From Pocillopora damicornis (taxonomy: Eukaryota), in contig NW_020846941.1 of the NCBI RefSeq assembly GCF_003704095.1, forward strand, positions 496,001 to 560,000: DNA of 64,000 nt, given 5' to 3'. The translations under genes and the position numbers were made by a program. Positions 1 to 42,107 of this stretch are shown here, in pieces. The first letter of the stretch is position 1. Every line of letters begins with the position of its first letter. Below the pieces are notes generated by a model. That model had not been told where the DNA came from. It searched no databases and saw only the letters and a list, made by a program, of their open reading frames with translations.

Positions 1-227
1 TTTACGTTGAATTTACTGAGAATACAAGATGTTTTGCCATATTTCTTCCACGTTAATTTGGGAATAATAAAGAGAATTGAAAACCGGAATCCAATCATGC
101 CGCTTGCCGCCAACAAGCGGCCCCATGTTTTGAATTACGCAAGAGCCGTTGAGTGATGATGCTTTTGAACCAAAATCGTCTTTATCATAGGGGATCGGTA
201 TTGCTACTTTTGCACAATATACCGTAC

Positions 228-398
228 CTCATCGCCGGCTTGACACTCTTGCATGCACTGGGATGATAAAAGCAGTACGGAACGTTCGGAACAGAATCGT
301 CCCAACAACATCTTCGCAGACCCACACAGGTTGCCTTGGTGATACCAACATAACCACAGTCTACTCGCTGCTGAGAATTGACAGAAGAACACAGTCCT
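228..398 (-). CDS. Trefoil (P-type) domain and start of a second one, after MAM24
   Basis: [41 protein letters not shown] fits the six-Cys trefoil consensus (R.DCG..GIT...C....CCWD......CF). It is followed by CKSVKPAMR. Confidence 0.88.
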
Positions 399-24300: not shown

Positions 24301-27300
24301 AACAAAAATATTTTGAGATTCCAAGGAGTTTGAGATGACCTGAGAGAGAGAGAGAGATATCTCAAACAAACTTACCTAAAAATGTACTTCAAGGGAAAGG
24401 GCTTAAAGTTAAAGTGCATTAATAATAATAATAATAATTAATGGAACAAACCTGTCGTATGATCAACAGCAGGCCCAGTAAAGGCTGATGGTGTGCTGCC
24501 ACTACCAACTAACCAATCAAAGTTGTCCTCTCTCTTGTCATTTGTCCAGGTACACCAGTCATCTTTCTCAAAGTCACAATACCCTGCCTGATTACAAGGT
24601 CCATCCATGAGCTTAAAGTCATCAATTGCTATGTCTCCAGTGTAGCTTGTGCCACGTACACCCTCAAATAACACCTGCAAAACAGATTTAAATCACACAA
24701 TTGACAATAATGTTTACTAGAATTAAATAGTGGAAGAGAGCACTTGTTCCAGTCTCCAGAACCCCTAAAAGGATACTCTTCTGGGAAGCAATCAAAAAGT
24801 TTAGATAGGGTGTCTAAAAGTTGTGCTTGCAATCCTACCAAAATATTACCATCCTCGTTATGCCAAAACATAGGATATTAGATGGTTGAATGTCTGTATC
24901 TACAAGTATAACTTTTGAACTATATACTTTCCAAAAGCACTATAATGTAGTTGAGATACAATTGAACCAAGTCTCCTAACTATTTCAAACAACTGAAATA
25001 CATTGTGTCAAAATAAAATTTTTACATAATTTTTTCATATTGAATTTTACCAGAGTTTATGAAAATTACAGCAATTTAAATTTATCCAGCTACATTTCCC
25101 ACATTTAGCACAATGTTGTAGTTAACATAGCTATCACAAGTGAGTCTTCAAGACAACCAGTCAAACTTACATTAACATAGTTAGGGATTGTGATGGATAC
25201 TTGAGCAATATACCACAAGTTCCCTTGATCTCTCTGTCGTGACCAAGCAGGAATAGATGGAACTGTTTTTGATGTCATGAGGTAAACATTAAGTTGACCA
25301 ATACTGCTCCCATACATATGGTACCAGAACTGAAAACACTTTCCACTCTGTGGGTTAATCTTTGGACCTATCAACCAGGCTTTGGAGTTAGGGGCAACAA
25401 ATGATGTCTCAATGAAAAGGTAATGTCCTGTAAATACAAAGCAACAAATACATTAAAATTTAGTTTTATTATTTGCACCTAGTACACAGAGAAGCTTTTC
25501 TCTCACTTAAAATTACAGGCATTCAGTGATGGTAGATTGATAAAAAGATGCAAGTTATTGTTATTGAAAATTTCCTACAACAAAAGGCCTTATTATATAC
25601 ATTTCAACCCACATAATATGAAAGACAATTACATATTAATAAGACATTAGCCTTGATTTAGGTGCTTAGTTCACCCCTTTCCGCCATACATGTACATCAA
25701 TGCCAGTTCCTTTAGAAGGTTTATAAGTTATTCTATTGATATTTAAAGATATTTCCTTGTTACCTCTGCCATCCCTAAGGGTGTGATCACTTGCTGGTCC
25801 TGTGTTGATTGATGATGTGTTGCCTTGACCAAGACGCCAGTTGATATTAGCCCCAGGATATTGCTTCCAACCACACAATCTCAGCTGGGATACTGGACTT
25901 TCAAAGTCACAGTCCATAGTTGGAGTACACTGGCCATTGCTGAGCTGAATGTCATCCAGAGCAATATCACTTTGGTAACTTGAACCACGCACACCCTCAA
26001 ACACAATTTTGTAAGGATTGTTATTTGTTAGCTCTACCTGACCATTCAACCATTTGTTGCCATGGGAGCCAGATTTGGACCAGACAGGGGAGTTAAGCTG
26101 GCCACCAGCATAGCGGTAGATGTTAAGTTGCCCTATGTGAGGTCCATACATATGATACCAAAAGGAAAGACACTTGGGCTGCGAAGGGTTAGTATTGACA
26201 TAAGGAGAATGAATTCTTGCAGTGTCACTAGGCTTCCTTGGGAATGATCCCTCTATGTAAACATACCATCCACGTGCTGAAAAGATAAACAAAATGCATG
26301 GTTACAGTCTCATATCTTAATTATTTCTTTCTCATCTTATTTAGAATCATTGGCTTTCAAGAGCCCTGGAGATGATATGAATGCTGTTCATATTATCTCT
26401 TGATTGCTGTTGCATTTTTGTAAATATTAAACAAAGACAATTATTACACTTAAATTTCAAAACTAATTCAATCTGTGCCTTTTTCCTGATTCTTTGCTTA
26501 GGGTTAGTTGGAAGAAGAAGGATGAAGAGAGCTAGATCAAGAAAGAAAGCAATGCAAAGTGTGTGGTTATAGACTTTGTGCTTCTGGAAGATAGCTACTG
26601 ATCTGCATATAAATAAATTATCATGGGCTCCCACACTGAGATTCTTAACTTATACGTCTCTGAAATCACCTTTTTTCATCCAACTCTCCTATTACAACTC
26701 AGTTAAAACACTTTCTGGTAATAGCAGACTGATTGCAACCCTTTGCAATAAAGTGAAATTTATTTTTGAAGATAAGGTGCAATATGTGCTCAAAACAAGG
26801 GAAACTTCTCTTTTTTCAAGTATATAGTATTTTCTGATAGTGAATCAGATAATCTCTGTTTTGACTTACTTGGTTGCCACCTGAACTGCTGATCCTTGTT
26901 ATCACAAGTTGTATTGAGGAGAAGTTTGCCATCATTTACTGCCTTACCACCATATGGAGTCCAACATTTGCTTGTTGGTAGATGCTGTATTGAACCTTTG
27001 GAGGTGAATTTCCACTTTTCACTGCACTTGTCATCTAACACAACATCATCAGCATTGACACCAGATCCCCCTCTTCGTCGCAGACACATATTGTACTTGG
27101 TATATTTAATATAACCATCAGATGTTAGCTGAAACTCCAAGCGACTCTCTCCACATCCGTCATAAGTCACTATAACAGTGCCTGGGGTTGGTTTACGAAA
27201 CCCACCCAAATAGACATGTATACACTTTGCAGATAACTTGTGTTGAAGAGACCCTGGACCATTGGGTCCTACTACTCCTTGTTGTTTGGTGTGATCTGCC

Positions 27301-30300
27301 GTTGGGCCAGTCCCTCCAGAATATGTGCCACCTTGATGTCGTGTCCAGTTAAAGATGTCTGTTATGTGCTCTTGGGTGTAGTTACAAAAGCCACTTTCAA
27401 AGTCGCAGTTGTACAATGAAGGCGCAATGGTGGGTGGCAGGGTGAACTGGGTGGTAGCTGTGGGCATTGAAGTTGTTACAGGGTTAGGATCTGCATTAGC
27501 TGGGAATGTGGTACAATCTCCACTTGTTATGAGAATATCATCAATGGCAATATCTCCACGGTAACCAGTACCACGTATTCCTTCGAAGATGATCCAGAAG
27601 TCAGAGCTTGGAACCTTGCTGAGGGACACTTTTCCATTTAACCACTTATTACCCTGCTGACCTTGCAAAGTCCACAGAATGTTTTCAGACTTGCTTCCAG
27701 ATGTTGTCTTTTGCACCACATTAAGGGTTCCAATATCAAGACCATACATGTGGTACCAAAACTGAAGGCATGTTCCTTTGGCAGGAACAGCACTTAATGT
27801 CTCGCTGAAAAATCTTGCCTTGTCGCCAGTTTTTCTTGGTGATGAAGCTTCAATAAACATGTAGGTTCCGTTGGCAGAGTTAGTGGTGTGGTCATTAGAT
27901 GGCCCAGTGGTAGATGACAGTGTATTACCTTTGCCTTGTAACCAATCAAAGTCATCTCCCTTACGGGTGTTTCTCCAGGTGCATGTTCCCTTCTCAAAGT
28001 CACAATTTCCTACAAAGGGATTAAAAATTTTCACATCACTTCCATATGATTTAAATATGAATTCTCAGCTCGTCCTTATCCTTTTTTCATTTTTCAACTG
28101 GAAGAAGTTTTGGTGTTCAATCTTTCTTTCTTCTCATCACCCTTGAAATGGAATCACATTGAAGGGAGAAACCCCTGTTTGGTCAACTTTGAGAGGGAAG
28201 AGGATAAGACAATAGATGTAGGACAAAAGTGGTCAACAATATAACAGAAAGTGATGGATGGTTCCAAAAAAATGTACATCCTTTAGGAACTTGGAAACTA
28301 TGGATTGAGGAATGATTGTTGTAAACTTCTACACATGATTGTTATAAAATTCTCAAGTAGTGTATTAAGACTGACAATGCACACTGAGACCCTCCAATTT
28401 GTCATTTATGTGTCAGATTTTGACTGTTTGCTAACTGTACAGGAAAAAGCCTGACACAAAAGCGCATATTTGGCTTTGAACCTTGGAATTTAAAGAGTGC
28501 AGTACCAAGCCTGTACTCACCAGGTGTTGGGCACTTGCCCGCAAATATTTCAACATCATCAATGGCAATATCTCCTGTGCTGCCAGCCACCTGACCTTCA
28601 AATGAAAGCCAAAATGGTTTTACAGGACTCCACACACTAACTTGTGCAACAAGCCACTCATCATCTTGATCCCCAGAGCGTCTCCAGATGCGAATACCCA
28701 CTAAAGAACCTGTTTTCTTATACACTGCCAGAGTCCCTACCGTTGATCCATACATGTGATACCAGAACTTCAGACATTTGGCACTAACTTTGGGCATCTG
28801 AGGAGTCAGTAATCTGGCCTTTTTCCCACTTTGAGCAATTGAACTGTCGATATACATGTAAAACCCTAGATGTATTCAGACAAAATTTTAAGCTTGTGAG
28901 TATAATTATACAGAAAGCCCAACATGGGCAAATGGTGACAGGCTGGGTGTGAGATCTTGATCGAAGTTTAAAGGGGGTAAGTTTCTAAAGAATCTGTGGT
29001 GCTGCATCAGTAGGGGAGCATAACAAGATAATTGTGGCTTTATCAACTGAGATGAGAGACAAAACCAAAATTATCCAATTTTCTATCACCAGTTGTTTAT
29101 TAAGTATCTTGTGTTTTTTAAATAATATTGCTGTAGAGGAGAGTAAAGTTGAAGTTCCTTACAAAAATATACAACAGTACTGTTATTAACATTTTTTCTT
29201 GTAATTGTGAATAGCCTTCCAGTCTCAAAATTATTAGTGTCAGTTTTCAACAGCAGAGATAGGACTACTGGTAACATTTTCTCTGCTAGACCATAGAATA
29301 CCTTCTGATGCTCAATAGCATTATTTGCATATATAATAATATTGATAGGCAATGAAGAGAAAGCATCTTCACCCTTTCCCTTAGAAAAGCTAAGTGTCAC
29401 CACAGACATACCTGAAGCTGATCCTAATGTGTGATCAGCAGCAGGCCCAGTGTTGGGGGTAACTGTTGCTCCACTGCCACGAGCCCAATCAAAATCATCC
29501 GTTGTATCCTGTTGGTAACCACACATGTGACTTTCTTCAAATGTGCAGGTTGCTGCAATGTCCAATTAAAACAATTCGAACAGTCAATCGAAATTTAGCC
29601 AGACATAAAAACAAAACTTTTCTTACATAAAATTTCACTGACTTCCATTATACTACAATTCCCCACACGTTGACGAGTTAATTCACAGCCAATTTGCGAC
29701 TTCTCATTCTTTAACTTCCAAGCTCTGATTGTTAATTCTCTCCTTAGCTGCTACATGTTTCCTTGCTAATTAGTTACAAGAATTTGGTGTTAGATTAAGA
29801 TAACACCTTCTATCAATTGAAATAAGTTTGTGTATTCTTATAGGGAGAAGTTACATGTTAATCATCTCTGGAATTTAAGGGTAAAAGTAAATGGGGGTGG
29901 ACAGAAGGAAAAATGTGGAGCCACAGTAATTTTATAGAGGTAAGAGAGGTTCAATCATAATTTTTCCTACTGTTTACCTTTTTACACCCTAGCATCAGTA
30001 TCTATACTCTTCATATTCTTCTCTAAACATTTCCTTTGGTACTAACAAGGACAATTGCTTAAACAAGCAAGACTTCTTAAGTTGGTGATCATTTCCTCTA
30101 GTCTCATGATCTTTGACTTCAAGGGGAAATTAGATGCTTGACACCCTTACAGTTTTAAGGTTTTAATTCGGTTTCAGGGCTGTTTCATTATTGAGCTTAT
30201 TAAGAAGCAATAAACCTCAAACAACAAATAGTATAAATGTGGCAGTCAGCTTTGCTATATTTTTGAGCCTACTCTGAGTACTTATTTTGTCCTTGGTCAA

Positions 30301-33300
30301 AAGGTAAATATATATTAGGGCTGTTTCATCATTGAGCTTATTAGGTAGCAATAAACCTCAAACAGCAAATAGTATAAATGTGGCAGTCAGTTATGCTGTA
30401 TTTTTGAGCCTGCTCTGAGCACTTATTTTGTCATGGGCAAAGTAAATATTAGTCTCTCCATTCAAAGTTCCTTCCTGTGCCTTTCCAACCCCTTTCCAAC
30501 CCCTTCAGTTTCTCACAAATATGACAGCATGAAGATTCCTAGGCAATTCTGTGCAAGGCTCATGGCTAGGTTGTGAGATATCCTGTGCAGCCATACATTG
30601 AATAGTTTAGTGTCTTAGGACATTGGAAAAACCAGAAGCCCAAGAACATCTCAGGCATTTTTTAGGATGAACCAGGTGTTAATTAATTTTACATGTTGTC
30701 CAATACATACTTGAGTCATAGTTGCAAGGTCCATCTGTCATAGAAATATCATCCAAAGCAATGTCTCCTTGGTAACTTTTGCCAACTGAAGCAGACATTA
30801 CAATCTGTAAAGAAATGCAGGGTTGCAGAAAATAAAGGTTTTTACTTTTTTTCTTTCTGCTTACTTATCACCTACAGTTAGTGTTTCACACCACTTTTAT
30901 GTTTTTTTGTGTCGTTCACTAAAACTGTTATCTACAATACCATTATTTTGTTCCATTCCACTCCAATACATAGGCTCCTTTCATTACTAGAAATAACAGA
31001 TCTCACAAAATGCCCCAAAGAATTGCACAGTTTTAAAATGAATATTTGACTTCAAGTTTACCTTAAAATGATCTCTACTGGTCACAGTTGCTTGGCCTTG
31101 AATCCATTTGTCTCCCCGTGTTCCTGTCTTAGACCACAACATTGAATCATGGGCACCTGTCCTGACGTAAACACTAAGGGTATTGATGTCTGCTCCATAC
31201 ATGTGATACCAAAATGACAAGCACTTTCCTTTGCTAGCAGTAGTTCCTGGAATAGAACTACTAATAAGCCTTGCTGTATCATTCATCTTTCTTGGCCAAG
31301 ATGTTTCAATGTAAACGTACCAGCCATTACCTGCAAACCAGTTCACCAAAAGAATGTCAGCAAAACTAAGGAAAGACACAATAAGTAATCGCTATCTCTC
31401 ACCAACAAGTGGACATCAGGGCAGATGTCTTGCCAATGTCAAAGTAAATTCTAAGTAACAAGTACCTGGTGGAAGTGAAACATTTCATTATTTTATTGTT
31501 TAAAAGTAGCATCACTGTTATCACATTACTAACCATTTCCTTTCGTATGGTCAGCAGAGGGGCCTGTTGATGATGATGCAGTAGAGCCTGCTCTCCTTGT
31601 CCAGTCAAACTGGTCTGTTTTGTCTTGTGTCCAGGTACAAATGTCTGATTCAAAGTCACAGTTTATGCCACCACTTGCTGCAGAGAACATTTTATACACA
31701 TAAGTAAGGAACTTCAGAAAAAACTGATAATATGATTTGAGTTCAATATGCTATATGAGTTTGGTCACTAAATAGCCTACCGGGCACAATATACTTATAC
31801 AGAATAGCAGACAGGGACATAGTTTCAACTCTACAGCCAAAAAACAAACACATATTGTGTGGGAAGGAAAGAAATGCTTCTACATTGATAACCTAAGATA
31901 ATAAAAAGTTCATTGTTTACATCAAGTTTACAGCTGTGAGCAAAAAGAGTTTCTTGCAGCTCTTGTAGTCAGATCAGCATAATAAAAAATTGTTGCATAT
32001 TTGAACATGATACTGCAAAGAGATTCCTACAACCTCCAAGACCCAACCTTAGGCAAATTGCCATTAACTCCCAAAGGTTGCCAAACTTACAAGCATTACA
32101 AGACTCTTCCATTTGCATTATTTGATTTTGAGTTTTATTGCATGATAGAATGTTACTCCACAAAAAAGGCACTTAAGAAAGTACACAAGAAGGTAACTTA
32201 CGAATAGGCGTTGTTGTGGCTGATGAAGTTGTTGGAGCTGCAGTGGTAACATAGTTTGGAGCAGCTGCTGTCGGACTCAGTTGACAATTGATTCCTGGAA
32301 GGAACCTAAAGTCATCAATGGCTATATCTCCTTGATAACTAGTTCCCCTGATACCTTCAGCAATGATCTGTTGTGTGTATCAAAAAAAAATTAAAGCTCA
32401 TCAGTACTGGCAGGGATGTGCTAATCTATCAAAGCCTGAATGTCACAAGAAAGTGGCTCTTGTCTTTGGGTAACTTGCTAAATTTAACCTTCATGAAAGC
32501 TTCCAATTCTTAAAACTACTAGGAACTGATAAATGCTTTACTTTTCTTATTACATTATCTGATTCTTTCTCAATCAAACTAGAGAATTTAGTGAACAAAT
32601 AAGAAAACACCCTCTGGCTGATTTTCTGGTTTATTCACATCACCCACTAGTTGACACTAGTACAAAATTGAGAGCTTCAGCTGTATTCACCCCAGATCTC
32701 AAACAAAAGAGCCCCTTCAGGTCTCTTATAATTAAACTGAGGGAGCTTTGACTGGCAAACACTATAACCCTTAGAAGTAACAAATACATGTACAGCCACT
32801 TATTACAAGCAATAACACATTCTCATTAGACAAGTGACACTCAGTAAAGCCCTAACCATTGTTCTGTTTGTTTATAGAAAATTTACCAAATCTTCTGTAT
32901 TCCTTGTTTTAAATTGTGCTTTTGTCAGTCTATTCAAAAGTTGTTATCATACATTACCAAATCAAACCTCAGAAGGAAAAAAAATATAATAAGGGAAAAA
33001 AAAGACTCTTCTAGACAAAAACATTTACATGACTGACATATTGGTTGAAACTGCCTTCAAGCAGAATCTTAATTTGCTTCCCAAGGCTGGTAATTATAAC
33101 ATTATTGCAGGCTGCTAGTAAAAGGGGGCTGACAATGTTTGGCTACCTTATATTTAGCTTGATTTCCAACTGGCACTTGTCCATTAAACCATTGTCTTCC
33201 TTTATTTCCTGAGAGGGTCCAGATGAGTGTTTCAGTATTACCAACTACTTGGTAAAGATTGAGGGAGCCAATGCTTGAACCATACATGTGATACCAGAAA

Positions 33301-36300
33301 GTAAAGCAGTTCTTGGAGGCCGTTCCATTAAACTGTGTACTGACTAATCTTGCTTTGTCACCTTGTTTTCTAGGACTTGATGTCTCAATGAAGGCGTAGG
33401 CACCTAATGACGAGAAAGAAGAAAAAGCAAAGAAAGAAAAAGAATTGTTTCCTTGCATAATTTTACTTTTGTTCTCACCAAATAGGTGGGAATAAATGGG
33501 AAAGGTTTAAAGGACTATGACACACTTGTATCTACTTTCTACAGTAACTATAGCCTTGTACCTTGAGAAGAACCCAGGCGATCTGTATCAGGACCTGTAA
33601 AGAAACTTGGTGTTTGTCCTGATCCCCTGATCCAATTAAAATCATCACCAGCCATGTTACTCCAAGTACAGAAGTCATTCTGGAAATTGCAGTCCCCTAC
33701 AGTGAAGATCAAAGTAACTCAGGACTTTATTCTATGCTATGTATGGAGCCAAGGTTGATTGTATGAAGTTGTAGCATGTTTTAATGTTACAACCCTTGTT
33801 TTATGACATATGAAGAACTAATTTAAAGTTTTGCCTTTGTTTTTTGCCTCTTGTCTATGAGTGGTAATTAACGCAGTTAACCTTCTGTCAGAAAAATTGC
33901 AGATTTCTGTACTGAGCAATTCCTAATCATAGACCAATCCATCTTTTAAGTATGCCATAAGCCATGATACAGGAAAAAAGAGGTACACTAACCAGGATTT
34001 GGACAGTGGCCTGAAGACATGGAAATATCGTCAATAGCAATGTCACTTCTGGCACCACTTCCTCTTACTCCTTCAAAAACAACCTGTAATACCAAAAGAA
34101 ATTATCAACATGCTTAAAATTGTCTTATCTGCCAGTGAAAGGGTTAAGAGGCAAGTTTTTTAACAGTGAAAAAAATGTAAGCAATCATAGTCAAATGAAT
34201 GCGAAACCAATATATAATAAGAAAAGAACTTCTGTCAGTAAGTCAAAAGTAAGGTTAATGACAAACTCATAACTTAGTTGCAATTTTCCCACAGTTTTTG
34301 GGAGTGGAGAAGTAAATCACATATTTAACATAGCAAGTAGCAAATATCATAAGTTTTTCATAATTACATCTAGTTTGTGGTTTTGTGGTTTGCTCTTAGT
34401 AAAAAAAAAAATTATCTCAAATGTAATTCATCAGAATGAAACAATAATTGTTGTCAGTGCTAATCATGACAGCTTGTTCCCAAAGTATTTCAGGCATCCA
34501 CAATTATTTGCAGATGATTGGAGTAAAAAGAAAAAGTACCTTAGTTTGTCTTGGCAAAGTAAGTTTAGAGGCAAGTACCATTAACACTTTCACTCCCAGA
34601 AGTGATGGACATAAATTTAAACCTCTCCCTACAATATCCATACTTTCTTCAGCAAACAAGTGATGAGAATATTCAAACTTATCCGGTAGAAGCTGCTATC
34701 TTGATCTAGCACCAAGTTCTCATAACTAATTTACAAGGAAATGTGTAGCAGCTACAGGGGAGAATAAAACCATCAGATCTTGGGAGTTGAAAGGTTAATG
34801 ATAACAATACATTTTAATTCATGGAAACAGCTGGTGACCTGACAACACTACAATCTGTGGTTCTAAAGTTTCAAACACTGTTGAGAGCTAAGATTACCAA
34901 ACTTACAGTAAATTGGGCTGTACTGTTGAGTGTGACACGTCCTTTTAGCCAAGTCCTCTGAACACCCTGGTCACCTGAGACAGTCCAAATTGCACTTCCA
35001 AGACTATTTCCAACTTTCTGATAGACATTGAGTGTACCAAGGCTTGAACCATACATCATGTACCAAAACTGAAAGCAACTTTCTGTGACTGTAGCCTTCT
35101 TGTATGTTCTCATTATCCTGGCCTTATCACCATTGCTCTGGTTTGAAGCTTCAAGTAACATATAATAACCTGCAGAGAAACAAAAGAAAAGTTACCAAGT
35201 AAGCATTTTACACTTACCACATTGACAGCATTAGAAAAGATGCTGCCATATTGTTTGCAACCAAGCCCGGGCTGAATCACACTTTTAAGGCTATTGGGCA
35301 ACATACTCGTACAGAAGCCATCTCCACCCTGGAACAGAATCTGAAAATTGCAACCAGCTGCTCAACAATGTGACTGAGTCACTTCACTGTTGGTAACTAA
35401 ATTCTAAAAGTTGTCTCCAGCAGGTAATTTATTTGAAGTCTCATCAACCTTCTTAATGTGAAACAACACACAAGGAATGACACGACACCAATAAACAATA
35501 GTAAATGACAGGAAAACCCTCACCAAGGTGATTGAGCAATCAACTGATTCTCCCATGCAGGTTTGAAAAATTTAGTTATCATAAGGTTTCACTGAACAGA
35601 ATATTTTGGGAACTTACCAAGAATAAGCCTAGGTGATAATCAAAATTACCAAGAAATCATCAATATCATCAGCAGTTTATCTTATTAGCAATCAATTAAA
35701 TCATAAAAAAATAAAACCTTACCCAATATAGATCCATATGAGTGGTCAACAGTTGGTCCTGTTCCTGGAGTGGGTGTGGAACCCTTAGTTCGTACCCAGT
35801 CAAAGTTATCTGTGTTGTCCTGTGTAAAGCTACAGCTATCATCTTGAAAGTTACATGGGTCACCTAGGAATAAAAAAAGAAACAAAAGTAGTGATCTACA
35901 TCTCTACCTGCACTTTTGCTGCCACTTGCACATGGTACGTAAGGCCTGAATGCTTTAACATGAACAAAAATTGACTTCACTTAATATTTAATGACTGCAT
36001 GCCTCTTAAAACAGTGAATAATCTCTCTCTCTCTTGCAGGACCTCCTCAACTTCTACCTCAGGGATCTGGTTCAAGCACTGTAGTGCCCCAAGCTCACTT
36101 CTCTACCTCTTTTTTTTTGGCCACCAAAACTTATGAAATAACCCCTAAAAAATGTTATATTAATTGAATGCAAAAACAGCATGATACCACCACATCCCTG
36201 GTATTTGAATGGACCAACACATTGGCATCCCAACTACTATGAACACATTCAGAGAGGCACATTAGACCACTAGGCTTAATTCTTGAGAAAGCAAGTTGGA

Positions 36301-39300
36301 AGACACAATATTATCAGGAAACAGACAGTACATCAAACAGTGTCCCATAACAGCCCCGTAAGCTATTATCTTATCTGAAGGAGTGAAAAGACTCATAGCC
36401 ATGTTCTATACTACTAAGAACAAGCATCTAAGATTTTCCACAAGTTGTTTTTTTTCCAGGAAGTGTACACATTTTGTCTACAAATAACACTCACCAGAGT
36501 AATCACATGATCCAGTTGCCAACTGAATGTCATCCAAAGCAATGTCTCCTTTATCATTCCCTTCTGCTGTTCCTTCAAAAACCAGCTAGAAAAGGCAAGA
36601 AAAAACATTGATCAAATTACACTCAGCCACATGAAAATAAAGACAATATTATTATGTTCTATCTTTTTTTACAAATATGATCAGAAAATTGCCATACCCT
36701 TATTATCTGGCTAAAAAACAGATTCACAATATATAACCAGAAAAACTTTAATTTCTAAATAAATTAACTTTCTATAGTTTGTACAAAATTATATGATAAA
36801 GACTTAACACATTATTGATACCTAATTCATTAGCCTATAAATGAAATCAAAGATGTTTGTTTTAAAAACTGTTGGCAAGTTATTGTGCACATCCATCCTT
36901 ACCTTAAAACTTCCTATCCTTGCCTTTTAAAATTCCTGGAAAAAGGAATTCCTTTTTTTTTCCATGCTCAAGCATGGAAAAAAGGCCAATGTTATGAAAG
37001 CCAATGTTATGAAAGCCAATGTTATGAAAGCCAATGTTATGAAAGCCAATAGGAAAAAACTTACAGAATAAGACTGGCTCATTACAACATCAACTTTGGC
37101 CAGCTTCCACTTGTTTCCTTGTGTACCATTCTTTGACCAGATAGGAAATCCCAAAGATGTTGTGTTAGCATACACATTAAGTGATGCTATGTGAGGCCCA
37201 TACATGTGATACCAAAACTTCAAGCACTTAGTGGTTTTTTGGGACACAGAAACCAATGGGCTTGAGATGCGGGCAATATCTCCACTCTGCTTCCCATTCA
37301 CCTCAACATACATATATCGACCTGCAAGAAACATACAAGAAGGCAAATGTAATTAGTCAATTAACCTTTCAAGGCTGCTAATATGTTTGGTGAAAAGTGA
37401 ATATTTGGCTGAGAAGCAAAGCCTCAGTGGCAAATGTGAAATTTTTAGGACAATCTCTCAGCCAAGGATGTTATCAGCCAACATACAAGCAAGCCAGGAG
37501 GGGGTTTATTCATTTTATAACCCTCCCAATAATTTTCATGCCATGCTTTGACAGCAGAATTTTGTTGAATTTTTTCTGGAGCAGTATTTGATGTCAGCTT
37601 TTCAATGTCACTAACACTGAACTCTACAAAACAAGTGCATTTTGGTTTTCTTCCATGTTAAGTAATAAAGATGAAAATGAGAAGCTCTTGAGCTGGCTTC
37701 TCGAGTTGGCTTCTTCCCCTGGCTTTGATTTGTTTGTTTTTTCAATGGAAATAGTGGGAGGTTATTGTAAGATAACTGTACCATGATCTTGTGCCGTGTG
37801 ATAAGTGAGTTATAATACAAAATNNNNNNNNNNCCCTCAGGTCAAGAACACAGACCTCTCTCCTGGCATCCAATGCACTGACTGTTTTGCCACTGTCTCT
37901 CATACAACCCAGCCACAATTAAATGATGCACATTTTACCTGTAAACAAGAACACAGATGTTGTATTGGTGTTCTGAGTACCAAGACCTTGTGATCCACAG
38001 CTAAAAGAAGGTCCATGTGTATTGTATCGCAGATCAGCCTCTTCATCCGCGTAGCAACGGTAATAAGAACCATAATTCCTGATACCAATGCCTTGAAGGT
38101 TTTTTTTATTTTTTTTTTTATATGCCTTTGCTTCAGTAATGCACTGTTGGATAACATTTGTTCCCCTGACTGTACCAGGTAGGGTAACTCTAAAGATATG
38201 GTTTCCATTGTATGTTAGATAGCAGCCCAATGAATAAACACCTGAAAGAAGAAATGGAAAAATTAAAACCTGTCATATCAAATTCTTGTTAAATTCCTTT
38301 CTAGGGAATTTAGCCTGACACCCTTTCGAAATATTTCTTTTTCTAATTACTCAGCTGCCTCACATAAAGGTGAGGTACAGACACCTTTCTGAAACAGACA
38401 TTTAGTGTCAGTCTTGAACATCTTTTTCTAAGAGAGTTTCAAGTCATGGTCACTCACCATCCGGGACACAATTTCCCCATTTACGATCTTTGTTATAATC
38501 ACTTGTGGTAGCACACCAAAGGAGAGAGTGAGCTACGGCTGTACATTGGCTATAATTTCCGGTAAGATATCTGAATGGAAACACACAATCTGCACCATTG
38601 GAGTTACCACCAATAGTTTTTACTGAAAAAATAGAGAAAGAAACATTATTTAGACATGTATATAATTATTAATAAATACATATATATCTATATTGGAAGT
38701 CTGTGTTTTGATTTTTCTGTTGTACAATGCTTGATACCTAGAAGTAGAGCACAATAAATATTGAGATAGGGAAAAATTTTTAAGTAGTTTGAAAGTATTA
38801 CTTCATTAACTCCCCAGATCTGTATCCATACTCCCTCTTTTCCCATTTGTTCCTTGGGAGATTCTGCCTCCAACAAGACTATTGGAAGTTCTAGATTCTT
38901 GCATTTGCACATTTTTTGAGCTTTATGTAGCATTGAAGTTGTTCTCATCAAATATTTTCAAACACTTTGGCCTTTTCTCAGGAGAATTTTTTCGGCATGC
39001 AAGTAATAAAATGACATTTGAGAAATTGTTATTTGAAGTTAAGCTACACCTCCTTACAAGCTGATACATCTTTCCACTACCAACCTGCTGTTAAAACCAT
39101 TCTTACTGTCACTATAAACACAACCATTAACATAGGAAAATAGGGTTTAAAAGAAATCAGTTTATAGGTTTATTACTAACTAACAAAGTACAGTTGTGCT
39201 AAAACTGACTCAGTGCTCACCTTTATCGGATTTTGGTGTATGATCTTTGGCAGGTCCTGTGCTTTTGGTATCTGTAGCACCATGATACCACCTCCAATCA

Positions 39301-42107
39301 AAGTTATCAGTCTTATCCTGTTTATAATTGCAAACACTGGACTCAAAGTCACAATTTTGTGCAGAGGTTCCTTTAAGGAAGAAGAAAAAAGGAAACCATT
39401 TTTAAAGGTGTTCTGAATGAGCAAAGAACTTTATTTGCATGTCTGATAATGGTGATCAAAATCAACAAACTAGACATTAGGCACAATTTTTGCACAATGA
39501 TTAAAGGCTAGCTGACATATAGGTTTCTTTCTTTGCATAAGTTGGCATGATAGGTAGGCTGGTCCTCACTCAAGAGTAATCACATTGTCATCTCTCTTTC
39601 CTAACCTGAAACATCTCCACTGTTCCAACTTTTTTTGCAATTGATCTTTTCATTATTTTGTGTTTACAAACAAATAACCTAGCATTTGGATAACACACAA
39701 GCCATAATGCCTGGCTTTGTTTCACCAGATAGCAATATTTGGTTGCTAGTAGTTGATTTGAAGAGATGTTACAAAAACCTAGCAAAGGAGTTTTGCCCTA
39801 ATGCTTCTTTGGAAGATGAGCTGAGAAACTCATTTTGAGACAAGGAAGCAAGTTCACTCCAGAAATATTTTCAGAGTTTACAAGACTAATGAGCTATTTC
39901 TGAATTTTTCTTAAGTTATTTCAAGTCAGATCATGACCTACAGATAAATTAATTCAAAATGTTTTGAACATGCATATTCTTGGAAACAATGTCAACACTT
40001 GCGGTTACATATAAATTAAGCACGTTTATTATATTGGTGCCAGCGCCCGTGGGCAAGATGAAGCAAAACTAATGTTCGCATTAACTACGCAAGTAAGAAA
40101 ATGCTTGGAGCGGACTTACAAAGTCCACAACTTTTGGTCAATGTCGGCGATGCAGTCGCAAAAAGCGGCAGAAGACAGTTAAGATAAAGAAAAAATAAAC
40201 GACTTTCTGAGGGTTTATTGTGCTGCAAACACAGTAGGCTTTGTTTCCTAGCTCTGGAAATCGACCAGTCATTCTTGATTCGTATTAGAGCGAATTTATT
40301 TGGTATATAGTAAATCCTTTACTGACAAAGCTTGTTCGGTCAAGATGGCTAGATAGCAGCCTGATCATTCTTTTTCTACGGTTTTTGGACCTTGACTTCG
40401 TCTCGGTCCATAAAAACGCCAAAATAAATTCCGCCAGTATCAAGCCATCTTGACCTCACGCTTGATCAGTAACGAATATGTATTTCAGGCATTAACCCGC
40501 GTCTTGTTTCACCAATTCTTGAGGAACGCATTCTTTATATGTAAGCAGCACGTTAATGAAGAGGAACTTGGCTCGTTAGGAAAACGTAGCTCATTCACAA
40601 ATAAACAACGAGTGCGTTCTGGAGATAACAAAAACCGCACGCACACCAGCGTTACACAGCCAATGAATTCTTGTCACGGTAACTGACTATTACTTTCAGT
40701 TCGATTTGTATCTTTCCAATTGGACGAAAAGCCACACACAAAAAAAACATGCAGGTAATCCAACCTAAGAACTCTGCGTTATCCTAAAGCGATTTTCAAC
40801 ACTTATCTAGAGCCTGAACCCGATCAAAGTAACCAGAAATTACCGAACAGGAACGATTGGGTTAACTCCTAATCAAAATTTTCATCCGCTTTAGATCAGC
40901 AATGAAGCTAAATGGAAATAACAAAGCCAGTTCCACTTGACTGTGTCACACAAGACCTTCTAACTATTAAGCTTACCGTCCTACTGAAGATATTTAAATG
41001 CGAAATTACTCCTTGAATACATTTTGGATCAAAGTGAAACTCGATTTGCGATCTGTACAGCTGTTTAACAAAACTCCCTACCCTCCCCCAGTAGAGCACA
41101 TTCTCAAGCTGACTTCTATAGTTTGGGCGTGTTAGAGTTTGTTTTTCAAACACAACTCAGAAACTAGGAAAAAACTAAAAGAAACTTAATAATCCCTTCT
41201 TCTTAGTGAGATAAAAGCATATACAGATAACCTTTCGAACAATTCCAATTACTTATTTTGTTAGGGACCCTTTATGTATACCATTCGTAAGTTACTCGCT
41301 CGCAAAGAAAGCCTTTTGGAGCCGCTATTAAAGAAACAGTTTACATAAACGAGATACATTTACTTAAAAATAATCTCGTTGCGATTAATTTCACCCAAAT
41401 AAGCAGTATTGTTTGTTTTCCGTTTGCCGACATTGTGTCAGACTCTGTGGGCTGTTTGACCTTAGGGGAAAAGTAGCAATGTGCTCGCGTAATTTGATTA
41501 CCAACTTGTGTCTTTGTCGAAGTCTTTATTGAAAAAGAAGGAAAATTTTCGCTATGTTCACCTATAAACAAAACGGGTAAAGGTGGTAGGATTATAGGCC
41601 GTTAAATTTGAGCATGACAAATTCAAAGGAACATCCGACAGTATACTTGAAAACTGTGTAAGCTCGTACCATGCACGGAAAAGTTTTCAACTATCTTTGA
41701 ACCGAAGAAAGCTTGTCGCGTTTCAAGATTAACTGGTTAAGCGAACGATCTGTTTTTTCCTGTCTTAACTTGTCTCTATAATACTTTCGAATTCTTAGCA
41801 ATATTTTCGGCGTTATTTAAATAGATACTGATTTCAGTTAAATTGGTATTGATGTTGAAGTAGCTTGATAACAAAATTGTTTAAATGAAATTATTCCGAT
41901 GATAAATTTTTAAAAAGCGCCGCGCCGACCGTTGTTCCAGTTCCTTATCGAACCATGGACATTTTACATACGTAGCTAATCGATTTTCCTATGTGTAAAA
42001 CCAATTCCTCAAAATGTCCTTCCTAACTCAAAGAAAAAATAGATTTACTGTAGTTACTCACCTGATACGCACAACACAATGACCACGAGCAGAGTAGCTC
42101 GTTGCAT
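228..42107 (-). CDS. Giant secreted MAM-domain repeat protein (24 MAM + FN2 + WSC-like + ricin-B + trefoil), related to coral 'MAM and LDL-receptor class A domain-containing' proteins; 3'-partial, continues beyond position 1
   Basis: 60 GT-AG exons with mutually consistent phases, 5'->3': 42062-42107, 39221-39370, 38458-38622, 37939-38241, 37065-37321, 36495-36585, 35723-35863, 34907-35169, 33993-34083, 33562-33696, 33147-33403, 32202-32367, 31534-31677, 31062-31330, 30711-30804, 29412-29552, 28521-28865, 26870-28009, 25764-26276, 25171-25427, 24452-24674, 23720-23997, 22915-23215, 22167-22435, 21422-21564, 20831-21158, 20310-20571, 19347-19606, 18622-18790, 17943-18349, 17518-17749, 16664-16920, 16117-16207, 15403-15549, 14642-14907, 13831-14077, 12841-13115, 12402-12492, 11971-12117, 11356-11615, 10946-11171, 10495-10760, 10037-10214, 9295-9441, 8946-9109, 8409-8513, 8086-8176, 7401-7556, 6714-6976, 6196-6286, 5956-6096, 5152-5420, 4545-4827, 3863-4046, 2997-3304, 2603-2868, 1983-2073, 1067-1228, 639-841, 228-535. 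Sum 13,523 nt, about 4,507 codons. MAM motifs recur throughout: CxFE..C.W, DxFDW, TGP..DHT, YMYIETS, C..FWYHMYG, FEG.RG...GDIAIDD. No LDLa domain seen inside the window. Confidence 0.93.
1467..1630. repeat. About 80-bp tandem duplication
   Basis: AGGTATGAAT.AATAAAAGA.GGTGGCT...GACTGAAAT...TAGTTATGA occurs twice. Confidence 0.8.
5445..5740 (-). mobile_element. Degenerate tRNA-derived SINE relic (second relic at about 22665-22845)
   Basis: Blocks CCTGGTTTCTATAGTATCAAGCGACTA, GGATGTGATGCTAGTCAATCGCAG and ATTTACATTCCTGAATGGAGAG resemble, from memory, the antisense of a common cnidarian SINE. Similar blocks recur near 22.7 kb. Confidence 0.5.
13200..13660 (-). mobile_element. L2/CR1-clade LINE 3' fragment in a MAM gene intron
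   Basis: Minus frame [30 protein letters not shown]...[18 protein letters not shown]....SLAIFKKQL is the RT C-terminal tail. It is followed by AGCGCTATATAAAT and an (ATT/ATC)n tail. Confidence 0.85.
14140..14333. mobile_element. TTAA-flanked CCCTTT MITE (piggyBac-like ends)
   Basis: TTAACCCTTTACACCCTAA...TTAGGGGTCATAGAGTTAA. Related copies at about 21830-22030, 29710-29885, 29975-30165, 34581-34798, 57811-58218 and 63333-63420. Confidence 0.7.
19622..19751. repeat. 45-bp tandem repeat x3 abutting a splice acceptor
   Basis: Unit AAACAAGCTGCATCAGCATTTCTGTTTGTAGGATGCAGCTAAAAT; each unit carries the internal inverted repeat AGCTGCATC/GATGCAGCT. Confidence 0.9.
26870..27275 (-). CDS. Ricin-B (beta-trefoil) lectin-like domain inserted within MAM7
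   Basis: Three subrepeats, each with a Cys pair and a QxW-like end: [17 protein letters not shown]; [17 protein letters not shown]; [17 protein letters not shown]. It lies between DHT and the (T)RGWYVYIE strand of the same MAM domain. Confidence 0.8.
30176..30450. repeat. About 141-bp tandem duplication
   Basis: AGGGCTGTTTCAT...CTTATTTTGTC starts at both 30176 and 30317. Confidence 0.9.
34581..34798. mobile_element. TTAA-flanked MITE copy
   Basis: TTAACACTTTCACTCCCAGA...TCTTGGGAGTTGAAAGGTTAA; the internal sequence is similar to 57811-58010. Confidence 0.7.
36985..37050. repeat. 15-bp minisatellite (GCCAATGTTATGAAA) x4.4
   Basis: Perfect copies directly visible, inside an intron. Confidence 0.95.
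37824..37833. other. Assembly gap (10 N)
   Basis: A run of N in the intron between the WSC-like exon and the continuation of MAM1. Confidence 0.99.
37939..38241 (-). CDS. WSC-like cysteine-containing domain exon (phase 1-1) inserted within MAM1
   Basis: [13 protein letters not shown]...[11 protein letters not shown]...[14 protein letters not shown]...[29 protein letters not shown]. The pattern LGCY...C..A...G.....C....Y..HG.S..C...G.G......VF resembles WSC-like modules. 303 nt, open frame, canonical splice sites. Confidence 0.65.
38458..38622 (-). CDS. Fibronectin type II domain exon (phase 1-1) inserted within MAM1
   Basis: Manual translation [55 protein letters not shown] matches the FN2 consensus (GGN..G..C.FPF.Y....Y..CT......WCATT..Y..D.KWG.C). 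Not listed in the supplied ORF track. Confidence 0.9.
40339..40455. repeat. Degenerate palindromic repeat (part of an element at about 40030-40480)
   Basis: GGTCAAGATGGCT ... AGCCATCTTGACC arms with inner TTTTTGGACC/GGTCCATAAAAA and apex CTTGACTTCGTCTCG. Confidence 0.7.
42062..42107 (-). CDS. First coding exon of the MAM gene: signal peptide [15 protein letters not shown](G)
   Basis: AAAATG start context, hydrophobic core, G|GTGAGT phase-1 donor joining in frame to [10 protein letters not shown] at 39370. An acceptor at 42202-42204 implies a further upstream 5'UTR exon. Confidence 0.8.

What the first reader, a model, noticed from the sequence alone, without database searches (positions are those of the whole stretch)
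26870..39370. MAM domains used as a display scaffold: unrelated binding modules inserted twice at the same internal loop
Seen: MAM1 reads CDFE...DNFDW...[13 protein letters not shown], then an FN2 domain and a WSC-like domain, then resumes with GRYMYVE...FWYHMYG...GDIALDD. MAM7 reads CDFE...FNW...[12 protein letters not shown], then a complete ricin-B beta-trefoil, then resumes with RGWYVYIE. The other 22 MAMs have only a short loop (typically DHT.G...G) at this site. Both hosts are the first member of a MAM triplet. Established: FN2 binds collagen/gelatin in fibronectin and MMP2/9; ricin-B and WSC are carbohydrate-binding folds; giant MAM/LDLa proteins are reported from coral skeletal organic matrix. 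Inference: this is a giant extracellular scaffold presenting glycan- and collagen-binding heads from a permissive loop, by domain insertion rather than end-to-end fusion. Standard domain callers would probably report these as broken MAM halves.
Basis: partly seen in the sequence, partly recalled or inferred. Interest (0 to 1): 0.8.

Follow-up and report, generated by a model that had tools for sequence, protein, structure and literature searches.

The report
Binding modules nested inside MAM domains
In a giant coral cell-surface and skeleton-matrix protein, two of the many MAM domains are split at one surface loop by whole extra domains (FN2 plus a WSC-like domain, and a ricin-type lectin), and that loop is where a conserved intron sits, so it is a clean natural case of domains being inserted by exon shuffling.

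Summary
On the minus strand, Pfam places MAM1 positions 1-43 and 42-135 on either side of a complete FN2 exon and a 101-codon exon. It places MAM7 positions 1-43 and 41-158 on either side of a complete ricin-B domain.

RNA contigs from four independent studies join MAM1-N, FN2, the extra exon and MAM1-C in one mRNA. They splice straight across the intron that holds the N gap.

The unassigned exon has a WSC fold: VIA Z 9.0-9.6 to Kremen and yeast Wsc1.

An AlphaFold model of a database-held spliced protein rebuilds a whole MAM sandwich from the two halves (Z about 21, about 160 residues aligned).

Both insertion sites coincide with a phase-1 intron in a Gly codon, present in about 20 of the 24 MAMs in the window. 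FN2 and the WSC-like module are symmetric 1-1 exons. The mechanism is therefore exon shuffling into a loop intron, as for FN2 in gelatinases.

The nesting is conserved. MAM1 is nested in six further coral sequences. MAM7 is nested in more than 25 coral exon ORFs and in an octocoral gene model.

The gene matches the published coral 'MAM and LDL receptor' skeletal-matrix protein. Binding functions remain inferred. The scan noted nested MAMs elsewhere in this genome; I did not test those.

The parts
42062..42203 (-). Exon 1: 5' UTR, start codon and signal peptide ([15 protein letters not shown], ending in a phase-1 split Gly codon)
   Evidence: RNA joint 42061/42062 to 39369/39370 in four runs. 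Translation. Same N-terminus in the spliced database protein P0124.
39221..39370 (-). MAM1 N-half exon (CDFE...DNFDW...[13 protein letters not shown]), ending G|GTGAGC in phase 1
   Evidence: Pfam MAM profile 1-43, E 2.8e-8. Donor read. RNA joint 39221 to 38622.
38458..38622 (-). FN2 module, a 165-nt symmetric phase 1-1 exon nested in MAM1
   Evidence: Pfam fn2 1-42/42, E 1.4e-16. Splice sites. RNA joints on both sides in four runs.
37939..38241 (-). WSC-like module with four conserved Cys, a 303-nt symmetric phase 1-1 exon nested in MAM1
   Evidence: No Pfam hit. AF2 model pLDDT 80. VIA Z 9.6/9.4 to the Kremen WSC domain and 9.0 to yeast Wsc1. Transitive HMM link through P0131 and P0128. RNA joints.
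37824..37833 (.). Assembly gap, inside the spliced-out intron 37938-37322
   Evidence: Located. RNA contigs of four runs skip 37322-37938 as one intron with GT..AG ends. Not filled.
37065..37321 (-). MAM1 C-half exon (G|RYMYVE...FWYHMYG...), with a phase-1 acceptor
   Evidence: Pfam MAM profile 42-135, E 4.8e-19. Acceptor read. RNA contigs.
36481..36585 (-). Stop-free segment holding the last MAM1 strand (LVFEG...GDIALDD...C). Exact exon ends not determined.
   Evidence: Stop-free segment. Contiguous with the previous exon in P0124.
26870..28009 (-). One 1140-nt exon: complete MAM6, Thr/Pro linker, MAM7 N-half (27410-27288) and ricin-B beta-trefoil (about 27272-26871). Donor CCA A|GTAAGT in phase 1.
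   Evidence: Pfam MAM 1-158 plus a second stretch, and Ricin_B_lectin 3-126/126, E 3.5e-10. Boundaries. The exon is conserved at 55-99% identity in 25+ coral ORF proteins.
25764..26276 (-). Exon with the MAM7 C-half (T|RGWYVYIE...GDIALDD) and the MAM8 N-half, with a phase-1 acceptor
   Evidence: Pfam MAM profile 41-158, E 6.5e-38. Acceptor. The octocoral gene model P0022 has the same junction (P-T-RGWY). Loci L035 and L038 show the same phases; L038 reads T-RGWY and L035 reads T-MGFY.
188..39370 (-). Host array of 24 MAM domains in triplets with Thr/Pro linkers, ending in a trefoil domain at 574-188. The gene continues beyond the window start.
   Evidence: Trefoil E 1.4e-14. Continuation.

Best explanation
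[quoted passage not shown] It has a signal peptide, at least 24 MAM domains in triplets and trefoil domains. Further down the contig there are MAM/LDLa alternations, a transmembrane helix and an NPVY tail.

Two of its MAM domains are true nested domains. MAM1 carries FN2 plus a divergent WSC-fold domain. MAM7 carries a ricin-B beta-trefoil. In both, the insert sits in the loop between the TGPxxDHT turn and the Y-x-Y-x-E strand (Pfam position 42/43), and the two MAM halves still assemble into one beta-sandwich.

The shared site is where nearly every MAM repeat of this gene, and most MAM genes of this genome, has a phase-1 intron splitting a Gly codon. FN2 and the WSC-like module are symmetric 1-1 exons sitting in that intron. 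The ricin module keeps the 3' intron and has lost the 5' one, in an exon that has also lost the two introns of MAM6.

The origin is therefore classical exon shuffling into an intra-domain intron that happens to lie in a surface loop. The arrangements were then kept for a very long time: ricin-in-MAM is shared by stony corals and an octocoral.

Shown: the architecture, the splicing of MAM1, intron phases, conservation, and fold compatibility.

Inferred: that the inserts act as collagen- and glycan-binding heads projecting sideways from a rigid MAM array on the cell surface or in the skeletal matrix.
For: - Pfam half-domain coordinates are complementary in both MAMs.
- All junctions are phase 1 with consensus GT/AG.
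- About 20 of the 24 loop introns in the window show a phase-1 G|GT donor and a phase-1 acceptor, and three MAMs lack the intron.
- Genome-wide, most MAM mid exons begin at profile 39-43.
- RNA contigs from four studies (X2, X6, X7, X13) carry joints 42061>39369, 39221>38622, 38455>38238 and 37937>37319. X2 has them in one 19,241-nt contig.
- The spliced database protein P0124 (421 aa) has exactly these junctions. The Desmophyllum pertusum model P0132 is 60% identical with the same order.
- Loci L031-L033 from other corals keep the exon order and all phases. L034, a short metagenome contig, holds only the WSC-like and MAM1 C-half exons, in the same order.
- The MAM7 exon is conserved in 25+ ORF proteins.
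- L035 and L038 keep its donor, acceptor and C-half exon.
- The Paramuricea clavata model P0022 reads N-half, ricin-like insert (40% identity over 180 aa), then T-RGWYLYIE C-half.
- RNA runs hold 0.61-0.64 of the sampled words of 25600-28100. Exons without the ricin part could give at most about 0.50.
- In the AF2 model of P0124, the N-half has pLDDT 81-93 and the C-half 87-97.
- VIA-align of that model gives Z 21.5 to 8yt7 (163 residues aligned), 21.2 to meprin beta 4gwm and 19.1 to RPTPmu 2c9a. The model range is about 16-339 and includes the chains' N-terminal strands.
- The third module has a WSC fold.
- The published A. digitifera skeletal protein has MAM/LDLr repeats plus fibronectin, EGF and trefoil domains and is classed as transmembrane (PMC4890752).
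Against: - It rests on splice signals, orthologous loci and one octocoral gene model.
- RNA evidence is from assembled contigs. They show presence, not absence, of isoforms.
- The AF2 alignment contained intact MAM rows that I had checked were aligned across the insertion. The model therefore tests compatibility rather than being blind.
- The FN2 part of the model is poor (pLDDT about 30, only two rows).
- The WSC-like exon has no Pfam hit of its own and only 4 of the usual 8 Cys.
- The ricin QxW motifs are degenerate (xEF, EKW, FRW), so sugar binding is uncertain.
- No binding or localisation data exist for this protein. Orthology to the Acropora skeletal protein is judged from architecture only.
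- Whether the downstream TM exons belong to the same mRNA is inferred from strand, order and the 19-kb contig length.
Confidence: 0.8

Rival explanations
1. The FN2 and WSC-like exons are optional cassette exons. Because both are 1-1, skipping either or both restores an ordinary MAM1, so the nested form would be one regulated isoform among several.
For: All four junctions are phase 1, so every skipped form stays in frame.
Against: Contigs of four RNA runs from four studies all carry the fully included form, at the same depth as the flanking exons. No 39221>37321, 39221>38241 or 38458>37321 joint was listed. P0124 and P0132 include both exons. Contigs can hide minor isoforms. For MAM7 the canonical loop donor is gone and only a weak GTCCAG remains nine codons on.
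Confidence: 0.12
2. The split MAMs are dead remnants. The halves no longer fold together, and the protein is simply a linear string of FN2, WSC-like and ricin modules flanked by degenerate MAM fragments.
For: Domain callers see only fragments. No experimental structure exists. The AF2 result was helped by my alignment.
Against: Both halves keep the family's conserved residues and are conserved between corals at 60% or more. For MAM7 the N-half, insert and C-half are all retained in an octocoral. The N-half has pLDDT 81-93, and about 160 residues of the model superpose on solved MAMs at rmsd 1.9-2.6 A. That is impossible with the C-half alone, which has about 118 residues.
Confidence: 0.05
3. 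Assembly artefact: the N gap at 37824-37833, or a misjoin, hides complementary MAM halves or brings unrelated exons together.
For: A gap does lie between the WSC-like exon and the MAM1 C-half. One low-depth X13 contig shows odd 'goes back' and 'skips 953' joints touching the right edge of the gap.
Against: mRNA contigs of four runs splice 37939 to 37321 with GT..AG ends. Independent assemblies of other corals have the same exon order without such a gap. The spliced proteins P0124 and P0132 agree. The odd X13 joints are non-canonical and at about 8x depth against 362x for the mRNA contig.
Confidence: 0.02
4. The shared site reflects structural permissiveness and selection only. The intron is incidental, for example gained later or irrelevant to the insertions.
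For: The ricin insert has no intron on its 5' side. n = 2 events. Loops are the usual place for tolerated insertions in any fold.
Against: The intron is at the same codon phase in about 20 of 24 repeats and in most MAM genes of the genome, so it predates the repeats. FN2 and the WSC-like module are exact 1-1 exons bounded by that intron in every species checked. The exon carrying the ricin has also lost the two MAM6 introns, so 5' intron loss is a simple explanation.
Confidence: 0.1

Closest known systems
Gelatinases MMP-2 and MMP-9 (three FN2 modules inserted in the catalytic domain)
   Same: FN2 modules sit inside another folded domain rather than between domains. They are class 1-1 exon modules (established knowledge: Patthy's exon-shuffling work). 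The host fold stays intact. MMP-9 FN2 repeats were the best non-MAM hits to P0124.
   Different: The host is a MAM beta-sandwich, not a metzincin protease. There is one FN2 plus a WSC-like module. A second MAM of the same protein carries a ricin-B at the homologous site.
[quoted passage not shown]
   Same: Long MAM repeats with LDLa repeats plus fibronectin, EGF and trefoil domains, classed as transmembrane and thousands of residues long. This gene has a MAM array, FN2, two trefoils, MAM/LDLa alternation, EGF-like Cys-rich exons and a TM helix.
   Different: Orthology was not tested by sequence here. The texts I could read list the domains but do not say that any sits inside a MAM domain, and do not mention ricin or WSC modules.
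Vertebrate MAMDC4/endotubin and MALRD1/Diet1
   Same: Type I membrane proteins built of alternating MAM and LDLa domains. PMC4890752 names them as the vertebrate counterparts.
   Different: No nested modules are known to me in them. They are much shorter and have no 24-MAM N-terminal array.
Kremen1 and yeast Wsc1 WSC domains (PDB 5fwt/5fwv, 7pz2)
   Same: The fold of the third module: Z 9.0-9.6, rmsd 2.1-2.4 A over 81-82 residues, 17-21% identity.
   Different: Only four conserved Cys instead of eight. It is below Pfam detection. It belongs to a cnidarian 4-Cys subgroup also seen in P0131 and on contigs C4228, C2867 and C4317.
Mannose receptor family (MRC1, MRC2/Endo180, PLA2R1, LY75)
   Same: Combines a ricin-type Cys-rich domain and an FN2 domain in one ectodomain. 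There is a faint Pfam hit of the ricin part to CysR_MRC2_N (E 0.0013, below cut-off).
   Different: There the two are consecutive N-terminal domains followed by C-type lectin domains. Here they are nested in separate MAMs about 11 kb apart. No homology of the whole proteins is implied.

Membership tests
MAM domain (PF00629) | Full-length match to the 158-position profile, here split over two pieces that together cover it | tested here: met
   MAM1 matches 1-43 plus 42-135, and the rest is in the next exon (P0124 stretch 41-157). MAM7 matches the N-half plus 41-158.
MAM domain (PF00629) | Jelly-roll beta-sandwich fold formed by both pieces | tested here: met
   The AF2 model of P0124 gives Z 18.5-21.5 to six different solved MAM proteins, with 149-166 residues aligned and model range about 16-339. 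This is a prediction, not an experiment.
Fibronectin type II (PF00040) | Complete 42-position profile with four Cys and the aromatic core (FPF, Y, WC, TT, Y, WG.C) | tested here: met
   E 1.4e-16, profile 1-42/42, score 60.7 against cut-off 22.2. Motifs read.
Fibronectin type II (PF00040) | Binds collagen or gelatin | not testable with these tools
   Inference from family only.
Ricin-type beta-trefoil lectin (PF00652) | Full-length profile match above the gathering score | tested here: met
   E 3.5e-10, 40.6 bits against cut-off 29, profile 3-126/126. Six Cys are conserved across 26 orthologs (five invariant, one nearly so).
Ricin-type beta-trefoil lectin (PF00652) | (QxW)3 repeats and sugar-binding residues | tested here: inconclusive
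   Read from the sequence, only degenerate forms are present (LEF, EKW, FRW). The octocoral ortholog is not recognised by Pfam at E 0.01.
WSC domain (PF01822) | Profile match above the gathering score | tested here: not met
   No hit even at E 10 for the window exon. Ortholog P0128 reaches E 0.06. The related repeats of P0131 reach 28.8 bits against cut-off 27.8.
WSC domain (PF01822) | WSC (PAN/apple-like) fold | tested here: met
   VIA Z 9.6, 9.4 and 9.0 to Kremen residues 117-210 and to Wsc1. These stand clearly above the PAN/apple tier at Z 5-7. Foldseek's top four hits are the same entries. The model has pLDDT 80.
WSC domain (PF01822) | Eight conserved cysteines | tested here: not met
   Four conserved Cys in eight orthologs. 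I therefore file it as WSC-like, not as a canonical member.
[quoted passage not shown] | MAM repeats with LDLa repeats plus fibronectin, EGF and trefoil domains, and a transmembrane segment | tested here: met
   Read from the window and 60 kb downstream on the same strand, compared with the description in PMC4890752. That all exons are one mRNA is inferred.
[quoted passage not shown] | Sequence orthology to the Acropora proteins, and presence in the skeleton | not tested
   The Acropora sequences were not retrievable within the length limits and caps of the searches.
Nested domain made by exon shuffling | Insert is bounded by introns of the same phase as a pre-existing intron of the host domain | tested here: met
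   FN2 and WSC-like are 1-1 exons in the phase-1 loop intron, in this genome and in L031-L033. Ricin has a phase-1 intron on the 3' side only.

The most novel reading that the evidence does not exclude
The phase-1 intron in the MAM loop may be a general hot spot through which anthozoan MAM proteins have repeatedly acquired different recognition modules: FN2, WSC-like and ricin here, and, if two unchecked notes of this scan hold, F-type lectin and pentraxin in other genes. On this reading the MAM sandwich works as a natural loop-display framework for lectin-like heads on cell-surface and skeletal-matrix proteins, with individual insertions kept since before stony corals and octocorals split.
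Probability: 0.3. Interest if true: 0.65.

Novelty: new member of a known kind. Interest (0 to 1): 0.45.

Why it matters
The case shows, in one gene, every step of the textbook model of domain insertion by exon shuffling. The host intron is still present in the sister repeats. The inserted 1-1 exons are still bounded by it. An older insert has lost one flanking intron. The host fold is predicted to survive.

It also warns annotators that 'broken' MAM halves in cnidarian giant proteins can be intact nested domains. This changes domain counts and architectures for a protein class repeatedly found in coral skeleton proteomes.

For coral biology, it puts three candidate ligand-binding heads at defined places on a protein that proteomics finds in the skeletal organic matrix. 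That gives concrete constructs for binding assays.

It is not a new principle. Nested domains and FN2 insertion in gelatinases are well known.

Tried and rejected
- **Complex prediction.** I meant to test the MAM7 N-half plus ricin against the MAM7 C-half.
- **Alignments for the nested fold.** Three MAFFT alignments had to be discarded. One put the N-halves of intact MAM rows on top of the WSC-like region (A3). Two scattered FN2 and WSC fragment rows (A6, A10). A7 gave MAM1 no depth. Only A11, checked by eye, was used.
- **Search for further nested MAMs in this genome.**
  - The 30 best FN2 loci and 30 best pentraxin loci have no MAM motif within 1.5 kb. This was a regex check with short flanks, so it is weak.
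  - The five weak WSC-like paralog loci sit beside other WSC-like and C-type-lectin-like exons, not beside MAM halves.
  - L041 is an ordinary MAM.
- **Triplet periodicity by identity.** A test at index difference mod 3 failed because my regex missed six mid exons. I rely on linkers and signatures instead.
- **Literature.** I found no paper pairing 'MAM domain' with 'nested domain', and the single paper pairing it with 'domain insertion' was not opened. The D. pertusum skeleton preprint says nothing on this protein.
- **No joined exon model.** Exons were searched one by one by reference. The spliced forms used (P0124, P0132, P0022) are database proteins returned by the tools.
- **The N gap** was not filled.
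Full report
**What is there**

The window comes from a Pocillopora coral, according to earlier notes of the scan. The finding lies on the minus strand, in a gene whose first exon is at 42203-42062 and which runs down past the window's first base.

Exon 1 encodes a start codon and a signal peptide. After it I count 24 MAM N-halves in the window and a trefoil domain at 574-188 (trefoil E 1.4e-14).

Pfam, run exon by exon by reference, gives the following:
- 39401-39213: MAM profile 1-43.
- 38665-38453: a complete fn2 (E 1.4e-16).
- 38272-37922: nothing.
- 37352-36930: MAM profile 42-135.
- The open frame 28034-26793: a full MAM, a second partial MAM stretch and a complete Ricin_B_lectin (3-126/126, E 3.5e-10).
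- 26292-25669: MAM profile 41-158.

The two split MAMs are therefore cut at the same profile position, 42/43, and the pieces are complementary.

**The gap**

The only N run is 37824-37833. It lies in the intron between the third exon of the insert (ends 37939) and the MAM1 C-half exon (starts 37321).

RNA contigs of four runs from four studies skip exactly this interval with GT..AG ends. The letters on either side of the gap are intronic, so the gap cannot affect frame or hide exons that are used. I did not fill it.

One low-depth X13 contig (about 8x, against 362x for the mRNA contig) has non-canonical joints. These place about 81 nt from the gap's right edge next to 38868-38878. I took it for a local rearrangement or a contig chimera and did not pursue it.

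**Splicing**

Read from the DNA, every junction is phase 1:
- ...AAA G|GTGAGC (39221)
- CAG|TA (38622)
- GAT G|GTGAGT (38458)
- CAG|GT (38241)
- ACA G|GTAAAA (37939)
- CAG|GT (37321)
- For MAM7: CCA A|GTAAGT (26870) and CAG|CA (26276)

FN2 (165 nt) and the third exon (303 nt) are symmetric 1-1 exons.

Read laying on 37055-42900 showed the joints 42061>39369, 39221>38622, 38455>38238 and 37937>37319 in all four runs. In X2 they lie within one contig of 19,241 nt. No exon-skipping joint was listed, but contigs cannot exclude rare isoforms.

Indirectly, poly-A RNA runs hold 0.61-0.64 of the sampled words of 25600-28100. Exons give 0.66 with the ricin part and 0.50 without it.

**Why the same site**

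In about 20 of the 24 MAMs in the window, there is a phase-1 G|GT donor three to five codons after DHT. There is also a phase-1 acceptor just before the Y-x-Y-x-E strand. Three MAMs (6, 11, 13) have no intron there.

Genome-wide, most MAM 'mid' exons begin at profile 39-43, on many contigs. The loop therefore carries an old, conserved phase-1 intron in a Gly codon.

FN2 and the third module are 1-1 exons sitting in it. The ricin module is fused to the N-half, in a 1140-nt exon that has also lost the two introns of MAM6, and it keeps the 3' intron. This is the classical signature of module insertion by intronic recombination. It explains the 'same loop twice' at least as well as structural tolerance does.

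At the MAM7 loop the canonical donor is gone (CAA GGA GTA). A ricin-less in-frame form would need a weak GTCCAG donor.

**The third module**

The third module has no Pfam hit even at E 10. Several independent lines point to a WSC relative:
- The ESM Atlas put it next to cnidarian clusters partly annotated WSC.
- A full HMMER search of 1.84 billion representatives found only ten relatives. Nine are orthologous exon ORFs or spliced fragments. The tenth, P0131, has repeats that just pass Pfam WSC, at 28.8 bits against a cut-off of 27.8.
- Ortholog P0128 reaches WSC at E 0.06.
- An AF2 model from eight orthologs has pLDDT 80 and pTM 0.74.
- Foldseek's top four hits are Kremen and yeast Wsc1.
- VIA-align gives Z 9.6/9.4 to Kremen residues 117-210 and Z 9.0 to Wsc1, at rmsd 2.1-2.4 A over 81-82 residues. 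PAN/apple folds follow at Z 5-7.

Only four Cys are conserved. I call it WSC-like by fold, not a canonical member.

**Do the halves fold together?**

The search returned P0124, a 421-residue protein from an RNA-derived Logan contig, 94% identical to the window in the WSC-like exon. It reads signal peptide, MAM1-N, V, FN2, G, WSC-like, G, MAM1-C, then the start of MAM2. These are exactly the junctions predicted.

I built an alignment in which 18 intact MAM sequences span the insertion. Orthologous exon pieces fill the halves, and I checked it column by column.

- The model has pLDDT 81-93 for the N-half, 87-97 for the C-half, 71-76 for the WSC-like part and about 30 for FN2, which had two rows only.
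- VIA-align superposes it on solved MAM domains:
  - 8yt7: Z 21.5, 163 residues aligned.
  - Meprin beta 4gwm: Z 21.2, rmsd 1.9 A.
  - RPTPmu 2c9a: Z 19.1, chain residues 21-183.
  - Neuropilin 5l73: Z 18.5.
  - Model range about 16-339 in all of these.
- The C-half has only about 118 residues, so the N-half must be in the sandwich.

The alignment encodes my assumption. This shows compatibility, not proof.

**Conservation**

MAM1:
- The Desmophyllum pertusum gene model P0132 is 60% identical with the same order.
- Three loci from other coral assemblies (L031-L033) have MAM1-N, FN2, WSC-like and MAM1-C exons in the same order and with the same phases.
- A Tara metagenome scaffold (L034) holds the last two of these.

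MAM7:
- More than 25 exon-level ORF proteins at 55-99% identity carry MAM6, the MAM7 N-half and ricin in one frame.
- L035 and L038 keep the donor CCA A|GTAAGT, a phase-1 acceptor and the C-half exon.
- The NCBI model P0022 of the octocoral Paramuricea clavata reads N-half, a 140-residue insert 40% identical to the window's ricin, then P-T-RGWYLYIE and the rest of the MAM.

The ricin insertion therefore predates the split of stony corals and octocorals. I could not date the FN2/WSC-like insertion beyond stony corals.

**Rest of the gene and what is known**

Downstream on the same strand of contig C3576 there are:
- a second trefoil;
- about ten more MAMs that now alternate with LDLa modules;
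- Cys-rich and EGF-like exons;
- a transmembrane helix;
- a tail exon with NPVY.

Takeuchi et al. 2016 (PMC4890752) describe the Acropora digitifera skeletal-matrix 'MAM and LDL receptor dcp'. They describe it as long MAM/LDLr repeats with fibronectin, EGF and trefoil domains, class it as transmembrane, and compare it with endotubin and Diet1. The A. millepora lists include MAM and LDL-receptor proteins 1 and 2 (5145 and 7311 residues, both fragments) and a 'MAM and fibronectin-containing protein' (PMC4043741).

The gene family is thus known. None of the texts I could read says that a module lies inside a MAM domain, and a full-text search for such a statement found nothing.

The closest known mechanism is the insertion of FN2 modules into the catalytic domain of MMP-2 and MMP-9. 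I cite this from established knowledge. MMP-9 FN2 repeats were also the best non-MAM hits of P0124.

**Function**

Shown: a transcribed gene for a secreted or membrane-anchored giant ectodomain, in which two MAMs carry nested modules.

Inferred: FN2 binds collagen-like ligands and the ricin-type and WSC-like modules bind carbohydrate. Sitting on a loop on the side of the sandwich, they would project from a stiff MAM array. The array is interrupted every three domains by Thr/Pro-rich, probably O-glycosylated, linkers.

The ricin QxW motifs are degenerate and the WSC-like module is reduced, so actual ligands are open.

**Limits**

That step is left out, and spliced database proteins stand in for it.

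**Verdict**

The architectural reading is supported, and the functional reading is untested. The mechanism is exon shuffling into a conserved loop intron. This is a good new example of a known kind, and of moderate interest.

Noticed in passing
window 188-574 (-) and G000:C3576 about 495898 (-): Two trefoil (P-type) domains follow MAM24 (Pfam Trefoil E 1.4e-14 for the first). The second lies just outside the window and leads into the next MAM. Trefoil domains are mucin-associated in vertebrates.
   Followed up: partly
G000:C3576:450000-491000 (-), outside the window: The same strand continues with MAM/LDLa alternations, Cys-rich EGF-like exons and a clear transmembrane helix (about 450664). 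A tail exon then carries an NPVY motif of the NPxY endocytosis type (about 450003). This suggests a giant type I receptor rather than a purely secreted protein.
   Followed up: partly
G000:C3576:457300-458410 (-), outside the window: Two or three Cys-rich exons of unknown family sit between two MAMs (end to end, not nested). Not searched.
   Followed up: no
window 37834-37914 and 38868-38878: One low-depth X13 contig joins about 81 nt from the right edge of the N gap to 38868-38878 on both sides ('skips 953' and 'goes back 1045', non-canonical ends). It is either a small duplicated or mobile segment that is polymorphic in the upstream intron, or a contig chimera. I used none of it to fill the gap.
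   Followed up: partly
window 36985-37050: A perfect 15-nt tandem repeat (4.4 copies) starts 15 nt after the MAM1 C-half exon, in the intron.
   Followed up: no
window about 13110-13840 (-): The loop intron of MAM16 holds a 124-codon open frame ([14 protein letters not shown]...). I took it for a transposable-element fragment rather than an inserted domain; the only check was that it carried none of my MAM motifs.
   Followed up: no
whole genome: Most MAM 'mid' exons on many contigs (C4228, C4204, C3188, C3313, C629 and others) start at profile position 39-43. The loop intron is therefore a general feature of MAM genes in this coral, not of this gene alone.
   Followed up: partly
G000:C4228:269675-275643 and 322899-323869; C2867:64625-64888; C4317:40874-41092: A family of 4-Cys WSC-like domains (GCY...KC...GG.C...CG..G.GG) occurs in tandem, next to C-type-lectin-like exons. 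It is related to the module nested in MAM1 and to the repeats of P0131.
   Followed up: partly
G000:C2706:19454-64354 (-): A tandem array of more than 25 FN2 modules on one contig, apparently a poly-FN2 gene and a possible donor pool for the FN2 insert.
   Followed up: no
other pieces of this genome (notes s1-762977, s1-765224): First-reader notes report a MAM interrupted by WSC-like and F-type lectin domains, and a pentraxin inside a MAM. I could not locate or check them.
   Followed up: partly
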